Shown here one piece after another: positions 7,791-41,437 of a stretch of 64,000 bases of DNA. Every line of letters begins with the position of its first letter. Positions within the stretch are counted from its first letter, which is position 1. The position numbers and the translations under genes were made by a program. The DNA comes from Dimorphilus gyrociliatus (lineage: Eukaryota > Animalia > Annelida), in assembly GCA_904063045.1 (NCBI GenBank), contig CAJFCJ010000012.1, positions 868,001-932,000 of the forward strand. Reading direction: 5' to 3'. The notes under the pieces are model-generated. The model was not told the origin of the DNA. It did no database searches and saw nothing but the letters and a program-made list of their open reading frames with translations.

Positions 7791-10700
7791 GATGCTTGTA
7801 TCAAGACCTTCTAGGCTCTGAATTATAAATTAACTGGAGAGGAAAGCGCACCCTATATAGTTCAATTACTTTCAAAAGACGAAATTAGTTGGAATGCAAT
7901 CGTGTCCTTAGGGATTCTTCTTCCAGCGCTTCTACGTATAGTTTTCTCTTATCAGATTGAACTTGGTAGGTCGTAGGGTGTGGAAAAACGTCTCAGCTTT
8001 TCTTACTACTCTAAAGGATCAATCTGAAATAATACTAACTGAGAAAAACGCTTACGAAAAAAAAAGGAATGTATTTTGTTCCCCCGGAAATGAACGGCAG
8101 CTCCGAGCTGATGACAAACTGTATGTGAGTTTAGAAAAAAATCTATTCCACACAGTGATTGTATATAACTTGTGAGCTATTCGGATTATTATATGACTTG
8201 CACAAAAGAAAATAGAAAGTAACACGTACGATATGTTTGTACAAAGTATATTTCAGTTAAACAGGTTGCCTTTAATATTTTTTAGTTTTTAGACCTACAA
8301 ACAACTTATAACCCATAATTGAAAACATCACAGAAGAAGGAAACTGCTTTACCCAGAAAACTTAAAATAATTTGTAATAGTAGAAATGAAGCAAGATGTG
8401 GAATGTATGGGGATTACATGTCTATCGTCGCTTTCTTCCTAATATAGAGTAGCAGAGACAGAGGAACAGAGGCAGAATGAAAGTAGTGCTTTCTAGAGAA
8501 AAACTAAAAAGCAAAAAAACAAAAAAGAGAAACAGCATTAAGAGAGTGAGAGAGAGAATGCTAGGCAAAGATGTAGACAGGAGAGGAAGGAAGGGAAGAG
8601 AGTAAGAGTGTGAGAGAGAGGAAAAGATAAAGACGGAGATAGATGAGTAAATAAACAAAAATAAAGCAATAGACGGATGGTAAAGGTGAAATAATAATAT
8701 TAATAAAAATAATGGAATTTGCTCTTTATACGATCACAAAATGAATCTTTTACTTTCCTTACTTAATATCTATTAGTGACCGGTCTATAATTAAATAAAA
8801 ACAAAAATTTACCACTGCATTAATCATTAATCGGCTTTTTTCAATACAAAACAAGTACAATATTTAATAAATTCGTTATATAGCCGATTTTGTTCTCATT
8901 ATACAAACAATGAAGAGAATGGCAAGTTTCAGTTCTTTCATTTATGCATCTTTTATTTAATCAACACGATCTGTGTAGATTAATACACAAAGGGCCAAAA
9001 AGTGGAGAGCTTTATGAGTGGTTGGTCGGAAAGAAAAAAATGCCCTCTTAGATTTAGCTGACGAGATGTTGATAAAAACATCTTTTTTCTTTTCCTTCAC
9101 TTCCTTGTTTTTCTATTCTTCTTTTTCTTTCTCTTCCCCAACAATCTATTTATCTTGCTTCTATTAATTCGTTTTGGTCATGCCCGCCTCATTTCTTTGC
9201 CTCTTAAATTTAAGCAGGAAGAATTACTATCTTTTAAAAAAGAATTCAATTATGCTACAAACCTCTATAGCTTTTGATCTAAAGTATGTTACACCTGCTA
9301 ATCTAGGGAACTATTCGCTGTCAGTCTTCCGGAGTATAGTATACCCCTAAGCCCAGAGGGGAATGATTCGGATTTACTCCTTTTATGATTACTTTATTCT
9401 TACGTCTTAAAGGCGATATTAAAGGAAAAAGAGTCAATAGAGGTAGTACTTTACAGTAAAATCTATCTTATTTTAAATTTTTCCTGCAGCTGTCATTAAG
9501 GAAAATTTATATTGACTTTTTCCTCTTTAAATAAGAATTCCTCTCAAATAGAAATTTTCAAACGCCTTTTCTACTTTCACATCGATCGACCATTTCATCA
9601 ACGAGCCATTGATCAAGAAAATCTGTTGTTTTCATCAATATACTTCCCTTATCGTCATTCTCTCAGGTTATATTTTTAGAAGTGAAGGGCCGATTGGCTA
9701 CTTTTTATTACATTGCGATGATCGTAAATAAGGCGATTATCGCTGACGACGAAGGCCTATCATCGATAGACGCTTCATATGTAATGTCAACGAGATTTTC
9801 ACAGCGCCCCTGACATTTACAATAGAATCTGGAATCGCATGTACATGGGAAAATATAAATGTAAAATCTGTCTATGGACGATTAAGCGTCACAGACAAAT
9901 CTCATTATTCTTTCTCTTTTATCTAATAGAACAAACCGAACAATTCGCCAGCGCAGGTGTTTTCATTACCTCGATTAGCATCGTACACGCCAATGAAGAA
10001 AACACGTTTTATAGTAATGTGAATAGCCTAGTATACGACTTGATTAGGGGAAGGAGACGGTACAAAAAGGTATTGTATCGAGTGAACTATTCAATGTATT
10101 TGTATGTTAACCTATACAAATAGCGGTAGCACTCGTAATCATATAATGCGTTTATTTGCGCTACATGTATACTTTTGTGTGAATTGGTATTATACTGTAT
10201 ATGGGATGCAAATCTACTTATTGAGAGAGAAACGCTGGATCGTTGATAAAAAAAAGTAACGCTTTACGCGTCTGTCAAGTTTTTAAAGGCGTCCTATAAA
10301 TTAGGAAGGACAAATCGATACCAATATACAGAAAGAAAAGATATATATATTTAGATATATAATATATATATTTATATCTATACAGGTATATATATAGATA
10401 TAATACATATATAAAGCATACAGTCTACAGTATATTCAAAGATAAACACTTTGCACATTGTTTTAATACTGTAAATAGTCTTATACGTAAATAGTCTCCC
10501 TTTTAAACAACTTTTATAATTAATATAATATTTTAAATTATCAATACATAGGTAGGCCTGACGCTTAATACCACCAGCAACCTATTAGTGTAATGTCTAC
10601 TGTCACATACGTTCTCAACGGATTTACATGCGTGAGGCTGTCGCTGTGAGTTGATAAATTATTAACGGCGTTTTAAAGGCACAATATCATTTACTATATA

Positions 10701-12073
10701 ATGTAATAGACCGGCCACTTTTGATACATTAACGAAATTTGATTATTCGATGGCGGAACCTTGTCCAAACCGGCTTCCCGAAAACGTGAGGAACATTGAA
10801 AGACCATCTTTCAGTACGCCCCTCTCGTAACCCCGTAAGCGATCTAGTTAATTCCGTGATTGGTGAACATTAAGACGTCTCCAGCAGGCGAACCGATCGC
10901 TTTTCAGACGTTTGAAACCTGCTACCGACAGTTCTTAATGCCAATTATTTAAGAATCATGAATGCCTAAACTAGAAATATAAGTTTCAATCTAATACGAA
11001 AGAGTATTTCTCTTTCCTAGTATTTTCAGTTAGTTGGATAAAGTTTAGTCAATTAAGAACGCTCCCCCTACCTCTTAATTAATATTACCCCCTTTTAAGA
11101 AAATAAAGCAATTTTAATTTAACTAGATCAATTTACAATCGATGCTATAATTATTTAAAATTACAGTTGACTTCTCTTTTTTTCTTTTTTTTCAAATATA
11201 TTTGTAAATCTATCTTACTTTCGGTTCTCATTTTTTTCTTAGACGCTAATTTTCCATCTAGGGAAAAGAATTATACAGTAGTGAGAAGAAAAGGTGATCA
11301 ATCTGTTTCATTTGCGGTTTTTTTTTTTACAGGAAACTTTAATTTTAATGACATTTATGGGATAGATAATTAAAGAGAATATAAGGAAGAGAAGATAAAA
11401 AGAGAAAGGAAAGGTGTAAGACTGTCAGGAAAAGGACTGAACAAAAAAGAAAATAATGGAGATGAGAGCGAGAAAATAAAACAGACAGCAGTCAGCGAGA
11501 AATATTGACTGCCTGAAATAAAGACAGGATCTATATAGTACTTCAAATCATTTGTAATTGTAGTTAATAAATCCTTTAAGACGAGAATCTGAAGATAAAG
11601 TATAAGAGGCATTTATTTCATAGACTCTCTATCTCTATCCCACTCTTTTCTCTCGCTCTTTGCACTAAGTAAGATGCACATTATATAAGTCTTTATTCTT
11701 CAATAGTGTTGAATAACTTTACTAGTAGTATCAACAAATTTACCAGTTAAATTGTAAATCTTGCTTTATGTATATCAATTGATATATTATACTGGGAAAT
11801 TATCTCTTTGATATCCACTTATTAATGTTATCAGTACAATCAATAATAATCTCAATTCTTCCAATAACAATTTACGAAGAGTCTCTAAAGAACTGGTTTA
11901 TTTCAGCGATTAAAACTTCAATCAATCTTCAACAAAGTCTGCATGATTTGGATAAAAGAAATCGTCATAGAGATTTCGGTGTGCTATCTAAGGTTAAGGA
12001 AGAAAATTGCTGTAAAGGAGTTTTCCTATTGCAGTAATATTATTTTCTTTGTGTATAACAATACGAACTTCAT

Positions 12074-32860: not shown

Positions 32861-33250
32861 CAAGTACAGCCTCACACGATAAATATAGCAGAAAATATTT
32901 GTCATATTTGCTCATCATTAAAATTACCTATCTTTCAACAACAATCTCATTCATGTGTCAACAATCTTTATCGTGATAGGTCGTCAAGAAATAATCAAAA
33001 CATACAAAGCACCTTAATAGAATCACAAGACAACTTGGGTAAAGATCCTAAGAACAAAAGACAAATGGTCAATTCCATGAACAATTTCACCCAAACTTTC
33101 AAAAGCGACAATGCGCTTGAACCAATTTGGTTAAAGCCTAGGCCACTACCTCCACCTCCACAAAAACACAAATGCACGAGAAAGATAAAAATATTTTTTT
33201 CGCAATGTAAACTAACGAGACAGCATGAAAATAAAAAGCTAAGTGATTAA
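32861..33250 (+). CDS. Candidate 129-aa stop-codon readthrough extension of KLHL5
   Basis: Frame after TGA stays open (QVQPHTINIAENICHIC...KPRPLPPPPQKHKC...KKLSD*) to TAA 33248-33250; ORF-track entry 33035..33250 is its 3' part in the same frame. Confidence 0.7.
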   Translation, partial: QVQPHTINIAENICHICSSLKLPIFQQQSHSCVNNLYRDRSSRNNQNIQSTLIESQDNLGKDPKNKRQMVNSMNNFTQTFKSDNALEPIWLKPRPLPPPPQKHKCTRKIKIFFSQCKLTRQHENKKLSD

Positions 33251-33266
33251 TGGTATCGTGTGAGGC
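32869..33266. repeat. 13-bp perfect inverted repeat (32869-32881 / 33254-33266), imperfectly extendable to ~21 bp
   Basis: gcctcacacgata and tatcgtgtgaggc are exact reverse complements; flanks caagtaca / ctatactag pair partially. Confidence 0.9.
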
Positions 33267-37600: not shown

Positions 37601-38857
37601 TTATCTGTCTTTAAAGATGGCATAGTTTCTCTGGACAAGATAATTTTCTAGACACTTTGGCTGTCCTTCAAGTGAATCAAACAAAGACACTAGTTTGTAG
37701 CCGTCTTCACTTTTCTGCTTATATTCAACCAAATATCTTGGTTGCCATTTAGCACAAGCTGTAAGCTCCTCGAAGAATTGACTTGCTTCATCTGTCCACT
37801 CATCTATAGGTATAACATTAGCTAGGCAGCACTCTACAGCTTGGTATTCACAGTTTTCAACAGCTTTAGGTAATTTACGCACATCTTCCGGAAACCTTAC
37901 CCATTCCGAATCTCCATAGTCCACGAAATAAAGATCAATTTTATTATCAGCAATATCATTTACACGGGCTCTGTACCATTTATCATCAAACTCAAATCTA
38001 CCTGCAACCATGTCTCCAATTGCCAGACAAGGTAGTTCTCCATCGTCTTTACTCAAGGATTCGGATATCTTAGTGTTTATGTCTTCCAGCGTTAGCCCGT
38101 CATCTTTATCCAAAAATTGACACCAAAAATGTCCAGGATTATCAATAGCAGATATAAAAACTTTTCTATAGGGAATTTCTGTAGGTATCATATCTTCCAC
38201 TTTCATATATTTTTTAACAGTCTCCTTGGGCATTTGACGAAAACGCCTCGTTGAATCTTCTTGTACTTCGTCAAATATTAAGCGTTTGGCATTATCTATT
38301 TGTTCTTCAGTCCCTACTAACTCAATTTCGTTAAATTTAGACTCAACTGGAATTTTCTGAATTGATATTTTACAGGAAGTCGCTTGCTTCATACGAAGGA
38401 TTGTTGCTCCACCTTTTCCAATTATACATCCAACACTCTTTTTTGGAACATGGATGATTTTTTTCTTAATATCAGGGATGCTCTTGAGAATCTCTTGAAT
38501 TCGAAGCTCCGCTTTTATAACTTTATTTCGTAGTCCACATATTTCCAAAGTTCTCTCTGTTTTACTCTCGTCTTGTTCGTCTACAAAGTGAAGTTGAACG
38601 CCGGTTTCCTTTGCAATAGCTTTTATTGCCATGCCATCTTTTCCAATTATATGACCACATTTCCTTTGTTCTACTTTAATACGAATTCTTGTATATTGCG
38701 ACTGCATGGCGGCTTTTGCTAGTCTATCCTCTTCGTATGGATCAAACTTCTTTTTAAAGAGAAGGTATAGTGAAAAAGCACATATTGTCGTGGTAGTGCA
38801 TAATACGGTTATCTTTAAACCTAATTTTGCAGTTGAAAATTTGCTTAATAATGTCAT
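37601..38857 (-). CDS. TDRKH: Tudor and KH domain protein (Papi/TDRD2 family), intronless
   Basis: N-terminal hydrophobic anchor, two KH domains (GHIIGKDG, GCIIGKGG), extended Tudor (WYRARV...LYFVDYGD...QAVECCLA). Confidence 0.93.
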   Translation of the reverse strand: MTLLSKFSTAKLGLKITVLCTTTTICAFSLYLLFKKKFDPYEEDRLAKAAMQSQYTRIRIKVEQRKCGHIIGKDGMAIKAIAKETGVQLHFVDEQDESKTERTLEICGLRNKVIKAELRIQEILKSIPDIKKKIIHVPKKSVGCIIGKGGATILRMKQATSCKISIQKIPVESKFNEIELVGTEEQIDNAKRLIFDEVQEDSTRRFRQMPKETVKKYMKVEDMIPTEIPYRKVFISAIDNPGHFWCQFLDKDDGLTLEDINTKISESLSKDDGELPCLAIGDMVAGRFEFDDKWYRARVNDIADNKIDLYFVDYGDSEWVRFPEDVRKLPKAVENCEYQAVECCLANVIPIDEWTDEASQFFEELTACAKWQPRYLVEYKQKSEDGYKLVSLFDSLEGQPKCLENYLVQRNYAIFKDR

Positions 38858-39125
38858 TTGCAATTTATAGTGTTGCGTAAAGCCAGAAAAAAAGTAACTT
38901 TAAAGTACAGCATGCAATTCGCTGCAATTGGACTACGTAACCAGATTAGTATGGTTCAGTATCATTTTGCGAAAGCTTTTGTGATACTTGCTCAGTAGAA
39001 TAAGAACCCGGATGTGTTAAGCTACTGACGAAATTTCTGGAATAAAAACTCCCTCTTACCAAGCTGATTTATCAAACTGATGCTCGAAAATAGTTATATA
39101 GATTGTGATATAAACGCCTAACACA

Positions 39126-40105
39126 ATGTCAACTCCGGCTAGACGGCGTCTAATGAGGGATTTCAAAAAGTAGGATTATCATTTCTTCTCTGTACAAAAT
39201 GGCCGACAATGGCTTTCTTTCGATTTAAAATAAAAAATTATAATCTCTTTAGGCTGCAGGAGGATCCCCCACAAGGTATAAGCGGAGCTCCTTCGGATAA
39301 CAATATAATGTTTTGGAATGCTGTTATATTTGGGTAAGTTTTCATAATACGATTCCCTTAGGTTATAAGGACAGCATTTACAATTGTTGCTTGTAGCCCT
39401 CAAGACACGCCGTTTGAGGATGGAACGTTTAAATTATCTATAGAGTTCACAGAAGAATATCCAAATAGGCCACCACAAGTGAAATTTGTTTCCAAGATGT
39501 TTCATCCAAATGGTAGCTATGATTATTGCGTATAAATTTGGTTGATGACTCATAAACATTTTCTCACAGTTTACGCGGACGGAAGCATATGCCTAGACAT
39601 CCTGCAGAATAGATGGAGCCCCACATATGACGTTTCGGCGGTATTAACAAGTATTCAGGTATTTATAAAATAGATTAGATTTGCGTCGGTTAAAACTGCG
39701 ACTGGTCTCTTGACAGTCACTACTACACGATCCGAACCCCAACTCTCCCGCCAATAATGAAGCGGCTATTTTATATCGTGAAAATAGACGTGAATATGAA
39801 AAGAAGGTGCAATTGATAGTATCAGAAAGTTGGGAAGATGATAATGATGACGATGATCAAGCCCAAAAACCAGAAACATCTTCAAAATGATAGTTTCAAA
39901 ACGATGACCAGTCGCAGAGATTTCTTCCACTCTTCTCCGTATTCATTCTTCTCCTTCGATACAGTCTCTCCTCGATGAACCGAACCCAAAAAGCCCTGCG
40001 AATAATGAAGCTGCTCAATTATTCGAATCGAATAAGAGAGAGTATACTAGAAGAGTGAAAGAGATTGTAGAACTGAGCTGGATATTCGTTCCGTCGGTTA
40101 ATTAA
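39126..40105 (+). CDS. UBE2A: Ubiquitin-conjugating enzyme E2 A/B (Rad6) with two alternative last exons (39717-39890 and 39965-40105)
   Basis: [21 protein letters not shown]; [34 protein letters not shown]; two homologous phase-0 terminal exons [13 protein letters not shown]... and [13 protein letters not shown]... Confidence 0.96.
39696..39917. repeat. 12-bp perfect inverted repeat bracketing UBE2A terminal exon A (39696-39707 / 39906-39917)
   Basis: ctgcgactggtc and gaccagtcgcag are exact reverse complements. Confidence 0.9.
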
Positions 40106-41437
40106 ACAAACAAAACAAAGTTCGTTTGCTTGTCATTGACAGTCGAATTTATTACATACAAAATGCAAATTATAAAAAGACAAGCTGTGCACATTTTAGT
40201 GTTTATTTCATTTCAAGCTTATTTATGTACTATATATATATAATACAAATATATCTATATAAATATGATCTTACATATTTATATAAATATATATTTATTA
40301 TATGTATGTAAGTTGTAGATATATAGGCAACCTGTATATTTGTGCTAAATATATTATTTTAAATAAGAAAATGTTTTTATTTTTGTGTGAATAAACTGGT
40401 AATTTTATTCTACCATTCTGTGATAGACACATATAGTTATATACTATATATATCTTATCTATATATATATATGTATATGTATATAAAATGAATAGGTATA
40501 CCTACAATCAGCATAATATCTATCAATATATGTAATACATATGCTCTATATACATATTATAAATGCTTTATCATGTGGATGAATATTATATAACTATATG
40601 GAGATAATTATTTAAGAAAAAAAATAACTCTGTTTGTGTTTGCTCTTTTACAACCCAGCCCTTTGTCAGCAAATATATCGTTCAAAGTTTTAAATTGGTG
40701 AGAGATCCTAAAAGGAAGTCAGAATATCAAGTTTTTTTTATAAACAAGTTTAATATCTTTGTCGTCTAGTAGTGACATCTTTTGGGTGTTTCAAAAGATA
40801 ATTTGTATATTAACGTACTAAAAATGATATTTTTATTATTGTTCTTGAAAATATAATTTCAAGTGATTTCTGAGCAAAATTGAATTAAATATTTTATTAT
40901 TTTTTCTTATTTTGTAATGCTTTGACCAAATTAAACTTTTAATGATATCAAAAGTTACAATTGTACAAACCAAACATATATAGTAGAATTTCATATGTTT
41001 TCTGTCATGATTACCGCCAATACAACAATACTATAAATATGAAAAATTTATAGACAGAGAAAACTGTAAAACAAAGCAAAATCGATGAAACAACTTGAAA
41101 GTATATAAAAATTTTATAATTGATAGATTTCCTTTCGGTAAGGTTTCATCTTAATTCAATATTTTGAAAGCATATAGAAAATCTGTGGAAAATAAGTTAA
41201 AGTCAACAGAATCATATGTAATATAGCGCATATGAATAAATTAAACTGGTTAGAATACTTGAACAAAACTCTTTTAAATATATTTAGAGGGTTTGAGCCT
41301 TCAAGTTTTTTTGAAATAGATATGTAATACGACGATCAATGAGCATTATACGGTAGGGACAAATCAATTTCACCATTCCGGCAGTCTGCTATTCAAACTG
41401 ATCGATAACCGTACACACCTTAAAGAAAATACAGTAC

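What the first reader, a model, noticed from the sequence alone, without database searches (positions are those of the whole stretch)
39696..40105. Rad6/UBE2A has duplicated alternative last exons (acidic tail vs no tail) gated by a 12-bp RNA stem
Seen: after ...LTSIQ| two homologous exons follow. A (39717-39890): [58 protein letters not shown] (39965-40105): [47 protein letters not shown] perfect 12-bp GC-rich complement (39696-39707 / 39906-39917) covers the region just upstream of exon A's acceptor and loops the exon out. Known: yeast Rad6 ends in SWEDD plus an acidic tail that promotes histone ubiquitination, while vertebrate UBE2A/B lack it; competing RNA pairings control mutually exclusive exons in arthropods. 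Inference: one gene yields a fungal-like tailed and a vertebrate-like tailless E2, chosen by RNA structure and polyadenylation.
Basis: partly seen in the sequence, partly recalled or inferred. Interest (0 to 1): 0.8.

Follow-up and report, generated by a model that had tools for sequence, protein, structure and literature searches.

The report
Rad6 gene with two alternative endings
The Rad6/UBE2A ubiquitin-conjugating enzyme gene of the tiny marine worm Dimorphilus gyrociliatus really is spliced to either of two duplicated last coding exons (acidic tail or no tail); the exon pair proves to be old and widespread in molluscs, insects and annelids, while the 12-bp RNA stem around the first exon is real but its role is untested.

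Summary
Observation confirmed. The window is Dimorphilus gyrociliatus (annelid, GCA_904063045.1). After exon 4 (ends 39658) lie two homologous, in-phase last coding exons: A 39717-39890 (acidic tail) and B 39965-40105. The perfect 12-bp GC-rich complement 39696-39707 / 39906-39917 exists. Transcript contigs show both joints, 39658>39717 in three studies and 39658>39965 in two; B has roughly a quarter to a third of the branch depth.

The public annotation holds only the 167-aa A form, so the 156-aa B form is new there. Both exons are under purifying selection against a diverged lineage (dN/dS 0.13 and 0.10).

The polyadenylation idea fails. The 74-nt spacer has no poly(A) hexamer, and A-form contigs run on through exon B, so this is a choice between two 3' splice sites with a shared 3' end.

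The same A-then-B pair occurs in snails (Nucella, Bulinus, Plakobranchus), insects (Gryllus, Cotesia, Timema) and three unnamed eukaryote contigs. Public models often keep one exon or wrongly fuse both. B exons group with vertebrate UBE2A/B (95/87).

The stem is far beyond chance and unchanged in the diverged lineage, but shows no covariation and no counterpart elsewhere. Its role in favouring B is inferred. The kind is known (Drosophila PGRP-LC, pip); I found no paper on Rad6.

The parts
39126..39169 (+). Rad6/UBE2A coding exon 1 (ATG at 39126). Transcript contigs start near 39008-39010.
   Evidence: Joint 39169>39253 in three runs. The annotated CDS spans 39126-39890. Translation [15 protein letters not shown].... 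An Illumina adaptor abuts 39010 in X4 (table 7).
39253..39333 (+). Coding exon 2.
   Evidence: Joints. Reading frame verified.
39397..39512 (+). Coding exon 3 (ends ...FHPN, the HPN motif).
   Evidence: Joints. Translation.
39570..39658 (+). Coding exon 4 ([12 protein letters not shown]..., holds the catalytic Cys). It is the common donor for both last exons.
   Evidence: Joints 39658>39717 and 39658>39965 (table 5, cut +3).
39659..39716 (+). Proximal 58-nt intron, removed in the A form. Its last 34 nt are identical in the diverged lineage L015.
39696..39707 (+). 5' arm of the 12-bp stem (CTGCGACTGGTC). It sits 9 nt upstream of exon A's AG, directly after the likely branch-point A-run (ttaaaac).
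   Evidence: (I5). Unchanged in L015.
39717..39890 (+). Alternative last coding exon A: SLLHDPNP...ESW plus the tail [18 protein letters not shown] (8 acidic, 2 basic residues). Gives the 167-aa isoform, which is the annotated one.
   Evidence: dN/dS 0.13.
39891..39964 (+). 74-nt spacer. It is 3'UTR in the A form and part of the 306-nt intron in the B form. It has no poly(A) hexamer and carries exon B's strong pyrimidine tract.
39906..39917 (+). 3' arm of the stem (GACCAGTCGCAG), starting 15 nt after exon A's stop codon. It lies inside a 36-nt block that is unchanged in L015.
   Evidence: (I5).
39965..40105 (+). Alternative last coding exon B: SLLDEPNP...LSW plus IFVPSVN, with no acidic tail. 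Gives a 156-aa isoform that is not in the public annotation. In A-form mRNA it is untranslated.
   Evidence: Joint 39658>39965 in X1 and X15. (dN/dS 0.10).
40106..40433 (+). Shared 3'UTR. The first AATAAA after the B stop is at 40390-40395.
   Evidence: X4 record 16 runs without a break from 39714 to 40433. Hexamer scan.

Best explanation
This is the single Rad6/UBE2A-type E2 gene seen at this locus in Dimorphilus gyrociliatus. Its last coding exon, which encodes the C-terminal helices 3-4 and the tail, exists as two tandem homologous copies.

The donor at 39658/39659 is spliced to one of two acceptors:
- The proximal acceptor (exon A, 58-nt intron) gives a 167-aa enzyme ending [10 protein letters not shown]..., an acidic tail.
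- The distal acceptor, 248 nt further on (exon B, 306-nt intron), gives a 156-aa enzyme ending SWIFVPSVN.

Exon A ends in a stop codon and has no donor and no poly(A) site of its own. A-form mRNA therefore carries the spacer and exon B as 3'UTR, and both forms end at the same 3' end. These points are shown.

The exon pair arose by an old tandem exon duplication that annelids, molluscs and insects share. This is shown for the taxa sampled.

The following is inferred. In the pre-mRNA the 12-bp GC-rich stem pairs the stretch between exon A's branch point and its AG with the spacer just after exon A's stop codon. That would hide exon A's weak pyrimidine tract and loop out 198 nt. The effective length of the distal intron would fall to about 100 nt, in a genome whose splicing favours introns of about 66 nt. 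The distal exon B could then compete against the 'first come, first served' advantage of exon A.

The functional consequence is also inferred, by analogy with yeast: the tailed form would be the better histone H2B ubiquitinating form.
For: Gene identity:
- The annotated 167-aa product has a Pfam UQ_con hit.
- Both exons best match UBE2A/B, C. elegans UBC-1 and yeast Rad6 chains.
- The genome is named through GCA_904063045.1.

Both joints in RNA contigs:
- A joint in X1, X15 and X4, three separate studies.
- B joint in X1 and X15.
- Branch depths (A versus B) are 3120 versus 970 in X15 and 6.9 versus 4.0 in X1.

Shared 3' end:
- Records 2, 6 and 16 run from exon A through exon B without a break.
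- The spacer holds no poly(A) hexamer.

Selection, measured against L015 (dS about 0.2):
- dN/dS is 0.13 for A and 0.10 for B.

Antiquity:
- A-then-B tandems in L005, L008 and L009.
- Nucella, Gryllus, Cotesia and Timema models contain both copies.
- The Gryllus locus shows a stop codon after the first copy.
- Bulinus and Plakobranchus each have an unannotated second exon.
- B exons form one clade, support 95/87.

Stem:
- Perfect 12 bp, -22.6 kcal/mol, present in the MFE and centroid folds.
- 0 of 300 shuffles reach it, and 0.05 such repeats are expected per window.
- Its 5' arm is intronic, so the stem can exist only in the pre-mRNA.
- Both arms are unchanged in L015 and lie in fully conserved 34-nt and 36-nt blocks.

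Context from papers:
- D. gyrociliatus has a median intron of 66 bp, and its splicing is tuned to short introns (PMC7854359).
- RNA pairings control 3' variable regions and counteract first-come-first-served splicing in Drosophila (PMC6191721, PMC8791459, PMC9013439).
- The yeast Rad6 tail promotes H2B ubiquitination (PMC10550974).
Against: Limits of the RNA evidence:
- Only assembled contigs were available, not raw reads. Isoform ratios are rough, and there is no information on tissue or stage.
- X4 shows only the A joint.

Limits of the stem evidence:
- The arms carry no substitution in the one relative available, so there is no compensatory change.
- At the local noncoding rate, 24 unchanged nt has a chance of 0.07-0.14.
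- The conserved blocks also hold splice signals, which could explain their conservation without any pairing.
- The fold of the whole 341-nt stretch is no more stable than its shuffles (z = 0.28).
- No comparable stem flanks exon A in L005, L008, L009, Bulinus or Gryllus. Plakobranchus is marginal at 16 of 300 shuffles.
- No second competing box was found in the gene.

Limits of the functional analogy:
- The tail is short (8 acidic of 18 residues) next to yeast's tail of about 20 mostly acidic residues. Its function in animals is untested.
Confidence: 0.6

Rival explanations
1. The two exons are true alternatives, but the 12-bp complement plays no part in choosing between them. The ratio would be set by splice-site strength (a weak proximal pyrimidine tract against a strong distal one), by intron length and by protein factors. 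The complement would be a lineage-specific accident, kept because it overlaps splice signals.
For: - There is no covariation.
- The arms lie in blocks that also hold the branch point, pyrimidine tract and AG of exon A and the start of exon B's pyrimidine tract.
- Seven loci from other taxa keep both exons without a comparable stem.
- The overall fold has z = 0.28.
Against: - A perfect 12-bp run with 67% GC at exactly this place is very unlikely by chance: 0 of 300 shuffles, and 0.05 expected per 64 kb.
- It can form only in the pre-mRNA.
- It brackets exactly the exon that must be skipped.
- It is predicted in both the MFE and the centroid folds.
Confidence: 0.33
2. Exon B is a decaying duplicate, and the 39658>39965 joint is splicing noise. 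Only the annotated A form would matter.
For: - Only the A form is annotated.
- X4 shows only the A joint.
- In A-form mRNA, exon B is merely 3'UTR.
Against: - Exon B has an intact reading frame in the right phase and a strong acceptor.
- Its dN/dS is 0.10, with 6.5 synonymous against 2.5 nonsynonymous differences.
- The B branch has about a quarter to a third of the depth in two independent studies.
- Orthologous B exons are kept in molluscs and insects and group with vertebrate UBE2A/B.
Confidence: 0.04
3. One reading: the isoform is chosen by alternative polyadenylation after exon A against polyadenylation after exon B, as in classical alternative last exons.
For: - In Gryllus an AATAAA lies 55 nt after the first copy's stop codon.
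- Bulinus, Plakobranchus and L005 also have poly(A) hexamers in their long spacers.
- The model may therefore hold in other species.
Against: - In Dimorphilus the 74-nt spacer has no AATAAA or ATTAAA.
- A-form contigs from three runs continue through exon B, one of them to 40433.
Confidence: 0.03

Closest known systems
Drosophila PGRP-LC, pip and CG42235 3' variable regions: tandem duplicated, mutually exclusive terminal exons controlled by competing RNA pairings (PMC6191721; review PMC9013439)
   Same: Homologous tandem 3' exons are spliced to one common donor. Intronic RNA pairing is proposed to decide which 3' splice site is used. The result is protein isoforms with different C-terminal parts.
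   Different: - Here there is only one pair of boxes, not a docking site with several selectors.
- The proximal exon has no poly(A) site or donor of its own, so the distal exon stays in the mRNA as 3'UTR.
- There is no mutational proof.
- The gene is a core E2 enzyme, not an immune receptor.
Looping-out or 'balancer' RNA structures that counter first-come-first-served splicing (Dscam1, PMC8791459; 14-3-3 zeta and others, from my own knowledge)
   Same: A stem whose arms flank the proximal alternative exon would bring the donor close to the distal acceptor and offset the proximal exon's head start.
   Different: Those structures are supported by covariation across many species and by in-vivo mutants. 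Here the stem is seen in only one lineage and is untested.
S. cerevisiae Rad6 with its C-terminal acidic tail, against S. pombe Rhp6 and human UBE2A/UBE2B without one (PMC10550974)
   Same: - Isoform A ends SWEDD followed by an acidic run, like yeast Rad6.
- Isoform B stops a few residues after SW, like UBE2A/B.
- The UBC core is the same in both.
   Different: - The tail is shorter (8 acidic of 18 residues) and is followed by [10 protein letters not shown].
- The two states come from one gene by splicing, not from different species or paralogues.
- Exons A and B also differ at 15 of the 39 positions of helices 3-4.
Tandem duplicated exon substitution events of vertebrates (PMC9741552, PMC8373072)
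   Same: An old tandem exon duplication, both copies under purifying selection, giving isoforms that differ in one homologous segment.
   Different: Those are internal exon pairs. I found no mention of UBE2A in those papers (0 occurrences in the hits). Among the vertebrate Rad6 sequences used here, only the B type was found.

Membership tests
Rad6 / UBE2A-UBE2B family of E2 enzymes | UBC (UQ_con) fold | tested here: met
   The annotated 167-aa product of this locus carries PF00179.
Rad6 / UBE2A-UBE2B family of E2 enzymes | HPN motif and catalytic cysteine ([16 protein letters not shown]), plus the Rad6-type N-terminus [14 protein letters not shown] | tested here: met
   Translation of exons 1-4.
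Rad6 / UBE2A-UBE2B family of E2 enzymes | Closest solved relatives are Rad6 orthologues rather than other E2 classes | tested here: met
   Both last exons hit UBE2B, UBE2A, C. elegans UBC-1, Arabidopsis UBC and yeast Rad6 first (E about 1e-13). Cdc34 and Ubc9 score far weaker.
Tandem-duplicated alternative (mutually exclusive) terminal exons | Adjacent homologous exons in the same phase | tested here: met
   24 of 39 residues identical, E 2e-16. Both exons follow an AG and start with the codon for Ser111.
Tandem-duplicated alternative (mutually exclusive) terminal exons | Both exons joined to the same upstream donor in RNA, and never to each other | tested here: met
   Joints 39658>39717 and 39658>39965 are seen, and no A>B joint. 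Exon A ends in TGA TAG and has no donor. Caveat: these are contigs, not raw reads.
Tandem-duplicated alternative (mutually exclusive) terminal exons | Both copies kept by selection and conserved in other lineages | tested here: met
   dN/dS 0.13 and 0.10. The same pair is found in molluscs, insects and unnamed contigs. B exons form a clade, 95/87.
RNA-structure-controlled splice choice (looping-out or competing pairings) | Complementary boxes in the pre-mRNA that flank or mask the regulated splice site, beyond chance | tested here: met
RNA-structure-controlled splice choice (looping-out or competing pairings) | Conservation with compensatory changes | tested here: inconclusive
   The arms are identical in L015 (dS about 0.2), so no covariation is possible there. 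No comparable stem exists in seven loci from other taxa.
RNA-structure-controlled splice choice (looping-out or competing pairings) | Two or more boxes competing for one docking site | tested here: not met
   No further copy of either arm with up to 3 mismatches lies within the gene. At most this is a simple loop-out, not a docking and selector system.
RNA-structure-controlled splice choice (looping-out or competing pairings) | The splice ratio changes when the pairing is broken and is restored by compensatory mutation | not testable with these tools
   Needs a minigene or genome editing.
Alternative last exons coupled to alternative polyadenylation | A cleavage and poly(A) site between the two exons, used by the proximal form | tested here: not met
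   No poly(A) hexamer in 39891-39964. A-form contigs read through exon B.
Yeast-type Rad6 acidic tail | A disordered, mostly acidic extension after helix 4 (SWEDD...) | tested here: met
   The tail is [18 protein letters not shown], 8 acidic and 2 basic residues. It is shorter than the yeast tail described in PMC10550974.
Yeast-type Rad6 acidic tail | The tail stimulates histone H2B ubiquitination | not testable with these tools
   Needs biochemistry or genetics.

The most novel reading that the evidence does not exclude
An exon duplication at least as old as the protostomes, and possibly the bilaterians, gave animals two Rad6 enzymes from one gene. One form keeps the ancestral xDPNP helix 3 and an acidic tail, as in fungi and amoebozoans. 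The other is a derived DEPNP, tailless form.

On this reading, lineages then sorted the pair differently. Vertebrates, nematodes and crustaceans would keep only the B type, vertebrates duplicating the whole gene instead. Drosophila would keep the first copy. Molluscs, annelids and many insects would keep both.

In the compacted Dimorphilus genome the exon-A-specific 3' end was lost, and a lineage-specific RNA stem evolved to keep the distal exon in use. The two isoforms would divide Rad6's jobs: H2B ubiquitination with Bre1 on one side, PCNA/Rad18 and N-degron/Ubr work on the other.
Probability: 0.3. Interest if true: 0.75.

Novelty: new member of a known kind. Interest (0 to 1): 0.58.

Why it matters
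Rad6 (UBE2A/B) is a central E2 enzyme. It acts in histone H2B ubiquitination, in PCNA-dependent damage tolerance and in N-degron proteolysis. What its C-terminal tail does, and why yeast has one while humans do not, is still discussed (PMC10550974).

Many invertebrates turn out to make both a tailed and a tailless form from one gene, through an old and selectively maintained exon pair. That provides a natural experiment: two isoforms that differ only in helices 3-4 and the tail.

There is also a practical result. Public gene models of this gene are often wrong:
- The two exons are fused in Nucella, Gryllus, Cotesia and Timema.
- One exon is missing in Dimorphilus, Bulinus and Plakobranchus.

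The Dimorphilus locus is very small, with 306 nt from the donor to the distal acceptor. That makes it a handy minigene for testing whether a single 12-bp stem can overcome proximal splice-site advantage in a short-intron genome.

Tried and rejected
- **Full-length spliced isoforms.** They have no reference and I did not type them. So I made no direct look-up of the 156-aa B isoform and no structure prediction.
- **First homologue search.** It used a hagfish UBE2A fragment and was swamped by vertebrate sequences. Region-restricted queries on ORFs that carry an A or B exon worked instead.
- **Atlas search with exon A.** It gave only unnamed UQ_con clusters.
- **Covariation from closer relatives.** Exact look-ups of four small ORFs around the stem found nothing. 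Only one diverged lineage was reached (L015), and its arms are unchanged.
- **P0272, an apparent A-spacer-B fusion protein.** I rejected it as an artefact of gene calling with TGA read as Trp. The DNA keeps the TGA stop codon ('translates_to_query: no').
- **Nucella locus.** It was not on record.
- **Duplex-energy test in other taxa and longest-run test.** No conserved stem was found. The 17-nt, 82% repeat at the matching place in L008 (I6) is not above shuffles.
- **Terminal inverted repeats of a transposon around exon A.** I rejected this reading because exon A is ancestral and sits at the same place in other phyla.
- **Promoter and terminator scan.** It is not relevant to a eukaryotic gene.
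- **Literature.** Searches for Rad6/UBE2A/Ubc6 with alternative or duplicated exons found nothing on this.

Full report
**1. What is in the sequence**

The region 39126-40105 (+) holds a Rad6/UBE2A-type gene with short introns.
- Coding exons 1-4 are 39126-39169, 39253-39333, 39397-39512 and 39570-39658.
- They translate to [15 protein letters not shown]...[34 protein letters not shown].
- After the donor at 39659 come two homologous exons in the same phase.
- Exon A (39717-39890) encodes SLLHDPNP...SESW plus [18 protein letters not shown], then a stop codon.
- Exon B (39965-40105) encodes SLLDEPNP...ELSW plus IFVPSVN, then a stop codon.
- The two share 24 of 39 residues (E 2e-16) and 73% of nucleotides at their start.
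- Both match UBE2A/B, C. elegans UBC-1 and yeast Rad6 about equally well.

The 12-bp complement CTGCGACTGGTC / GACCAGTCGCAG lies at 39696-39707 and 39906-39917 (I5). It is part of both the MFE and the centroid fold.

**2. Is the stem more than chance?**

Several tests say yes:
- In the whole 64-kb window, perfect 12-mer inverted repeats within 400 nt and with GC of at least 50% occur at only two places. A first-order Markov model expects 0.05.
- None of 300 shuffles of the 60 nt before exon A against the 74-nt spacer reaches a 12-nt run.
- The duplex energy is -22.6 kcal/mol.

Against this, the whole 341-nt stretch folds no better than its shuffles (z = 0.28). Only this one helix stands out.

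**3. Organism**

The neighbouring single-exon gene (KH, KH and Tudor domains; 37604-38857, minus strand) is found exactly on contig CAJFCJ010000012.1 of GCA_904063045.1. PMC10212961 names that assembly as Dimorphilus gyrociliatus.

The annotation there has a 167-aa UQ_con product spanning 39126-39890. That is the A form. The 156-aa B form is not annotated.

**4. Are both exons used?**

Only Logan contigs could be laid on the region, not raw reads.
- The joint 39658>39717 is present in X1, X15 and X4, from three different studies.
- The joint 39658>39965 is present in X1 and X15.
- The two branches of the assembly bubble have depths of 3120 against 970 (X15) and 6.9 against 4.0 (X1). B is therefore a substantial minority, but these figures are rough.
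- A-form contigs continue without a break from exon A through the spacer into exon B (records 2 and 6). In X4 the contig reaches 40433 (record 16).
- The spacer has no AATAAA or ATTAAA, and the first AATAAA after exon B is at 40390.

The event is therefore a choice between two 3' splice sites 248 nt apart, with a common 3' end. It is not alternative polyadenylation. Neither form places its stop codon upstream of a splice junction, so neither is an obvious target of nonsense-mediated decay (inference).

**5. Selection within the lineage**

A Logan genomic contig, L015, was reached through protein P0272. It is 94% identical to the window over 1.5 kb and keeps all the introns.

| Region | dS | dN/dS |
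|---|---|---|
| Exons 1-4 | 0.23 | 0.00 |
| Exon A | 0.18 | 0.13 |
| Exon B | 0.22 | 0.10 |

(All values.) Exon B is therefore kept as coding sequence, not merely as UTR.

Noncoding divergence is 0.08-0.11. Both stem arms are unchanged. They lie in the two longest fully conserved noncoding blocks here, the last 34 nt of the proximal intron and 36 nt of the spacer.

This fits constraint but does not prove pairing:
- The chance that 24 nt stay unchanged is 0.07-0.14 at the noncoding rate.
- The conserved blocks also hold splice signals.
- With no substitution in the arms, there can be no compensatory change.

P0272 looked like an A-spacer-B fusion protein. That is an artefact of gene calling with TGA read as Trp, because the DNA keeps the TGA stop codon.

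**6. The pair is old and widespread**

A search with exon A against 1.84 billion representative proteins returned many ORF fragments of the form 'intron remnant + [17 protein letters not shown]...ESW + acidic tail'. Fetching their contigs showed the same A-then-B order in three unnamed eukaryotes:
- L005/L006: A at 347-517, B at 1068-1199.
- L008: A at 1045-1224, B at 2035-2166.
- L009: A at 10088-10228, B at 10678-10806.

Region-restricted homologue searches then gave named species:
- The Nucella lapillus model (213 aa) strings A and B together.
- The Gryllus, Cotesia and Timema models string together SLLSDPNP...EQSF and SLLDEPNP...SWLNFQ.
- Plakobranchus, Octopus, Argonauta and Sinanodonta models hold only the A type.
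- The Bulinus model holds only the B type.

Three loci were checked at the DNA level:
- In Gryllus the first copy ends EQSFVD followed by TAG. The second copy lies 1.25 kb further on and has its own acceptor.
- Bulinus hides an unannotated A exon inside its last intron (L016 4731-4910).
- Plakobranchus has an unannotated B exon 2.1 kb beyond the annotated gene end (L017 24126).

A maximum-likelihood tree of the 39-residue cores was built. It has few columns, so only the strongest splits count.
- All second-copy exons, together with vertebrate UBE2A/B and the arthropod SWLNF type, form one clade (95/87).
- The spiralian A exons group together (85/74).
- The insect first copy comes out next to the B clade (89/77), so its orthology to spiralian A is open.

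In the search with a mollusc A-type exon, fungal Rad6 proteins ranked ahead of most animal B-type proteins. Non-animal sequences share the xDPNP motif and often have acidic tails. So A looks like the conservative copy and B like the derived, animal-specific one.

No B exon was found within 2-3 kb downstream of A in L010 or in L011-L013. Either it lies further away there or it has been lost.

**7. Is the stem conserved elsewhere?**

No. Two tests were applied to L005, L008, L009, Bulinus, Gryllus and Plakobranchus: duplex energy and longest Watson-Crick run between the 60 nt before exon A and the spacer. Neither gives a signal above shuffles. Plakobranchus is marginal, with a 10-nt run reached in 16 of 300 shuffles.

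Those species have spacers of 450-2100 nt. Several have poly(A) hexamers in the spacer (Gryllus, Bulinus, Plakobranchus, L005), while L008 and L009 have none.

The stem therefore goes with the extremely compact Dimorphilus arrangement, where the spacer is 74 nt and there is no separate 3' end for exon A.

**8. Mechanism proposed**

Shown: one donor, two acceptors, both used, and one shared 3' end.

Inferred:
- The proximal 58-nt intron is of the size this species splices best. The median intron is 66 bp, and splicing is tuned to short introns (PMC7854359).
- The proximal intron is also transcribed first. On both counts exon A should win, despite its poor pyrimidine tract (ctgcgactggtctcttgacag).
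- Exon B has a long pyrimidine tract but needs a 306-nt intron.
- Once the spacer is transcribed, the stem can form. It would cover the stretch between the likely branch point (ttaaaac) and exon A's AG, and loop out 198 nt. About 37 + 47 nt plus the helix would remain between the donor and exon B's AG.
- That would favour B. The observed mixture would reflect a race between recognition of the exon A acceptor and stem formation.

This is the logic shown experimentally for Drosophila 3' variable regions and for Dscam1 'balancer' pairings (PMC6191721, PMC8791459). Here it is a single pair of boxes, with no competing selector.

**9. Function of the two proteins (inference only)**

In yeast the acidic tail raises H2B-K123 ubiquitination and Rad6 stability. 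[quoted passage not shown]
- Isoform A ends SWEDD plus an acidic run.
- Isoform B replaces this with IFVPSVN and also differs at 15 of the 39 positions in helices 3-4.
- A division of labour between chromatin work and other Rad6 pathways is plausible but untested.

**10. Novelty and verdict**

The kind of system is known: tandem duplicated alternative terminal exons, possibly steered by RNA pairing. I found no paper that describes it for Rad6, UBE2A or Ubc6, and public gene models mostly get it wrong. I rate it a new member of a known kind.

My confidence by part:
- Alternative splicing to both exons: about 0.9.
- Antiquity of the exon pair: about 0.85.
- A role for the stem in splice choice: about 0.45.

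Noticed in passing
window 37604-38857 (-): A single-exon gene for a 418-aa protein with two KH domains and a Tudor domain behind an N-terminal hydrophobic stretch (TDRKH/Papi-like). It lies head to head with Rad6: the start codons are 268 nt apart (38857 and 39126), and Rad6 transcripts begin near 39008. This looks like a shared bidirectional promoter. One X15 contig (record 5, 4134 nt) runs across both genes.
   Followed up: partly
window 32869-32881 / 33254-33266: This is the only other GC-rich perfect 12-13-nt inverted repeat within 400 nt in the whole window. It falls in the stretch that another note (s1-080257) reads as a KLHL5 readthrough candidate with a long-range stem.
   Followed up: no
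P0271 (Nucella lapillus), P0273 (Gryllus bimaculatus; L014 6232-6357 and 7609-7779), P0274 (Cotesia congregata), P0275 and P0276 (Timema): These public gene models join both alternative last exons of Rad6 into one protein of 200-235 aa. In Gryllus the stop codon after the first copy is bypassed by an invented 33-nt exon at L014 6625-6657. All of these are annotation errors.
   Followed up: partly
L016 4731-4910 (Bulinus truncatus); L017 24126-24242 (Plakobranchus ocellatus): Bulinus has an unannotated A-type exon inside its last intron. Plakobranchus has an unannotated B-type exon 2.1 kb beyond the annotated gene end.
   Followed up: yes
L015 (Logan contig from SRR23372229), protein P0272: The collection's gene caller read TGA as Trp on this eukaryotic contig. 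That produced a false 140-aa ORF spanning intron, exon A, spacer and exon B. The contig itself is a Dimorphilus lineage about 6% diverged from the reference, with intron 2 about 40% different.
   Followed up: yes
L011-L013 (JGI metagenomes 3300006913, 3300027544, 3300005649) and L010: An A-type exon with a long acidic tail is present, but no B-type exon within 2-3 kb downstream. Either B has been lost or the spacer is much longer. From memory, these JGI samples may be gutless-oligochaete symbiosis metagenomes; I did not check this.
   Followed up: no
window 40200-40560: A long AT-rich (TA)n-like low-complexity stretch lies in and beyond the Rad6 3'UTR. Transcript contigs break here, and read laying skipped repeats at 40270-40313 and 40444-40494. 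The exact 3' end could therefore not be read from contigs.
   Followed up: no
window 39920-39936 / 40049-40065: A 17-nt, 88% complementary pair joins exon B's pyrimidine tract with a purine-rich stretch inside exon B (I1). It could mask the B acceptor, or it may simply reflect pyrimidine against purine composition. It was not tested against shuffles.
   Followed up: no
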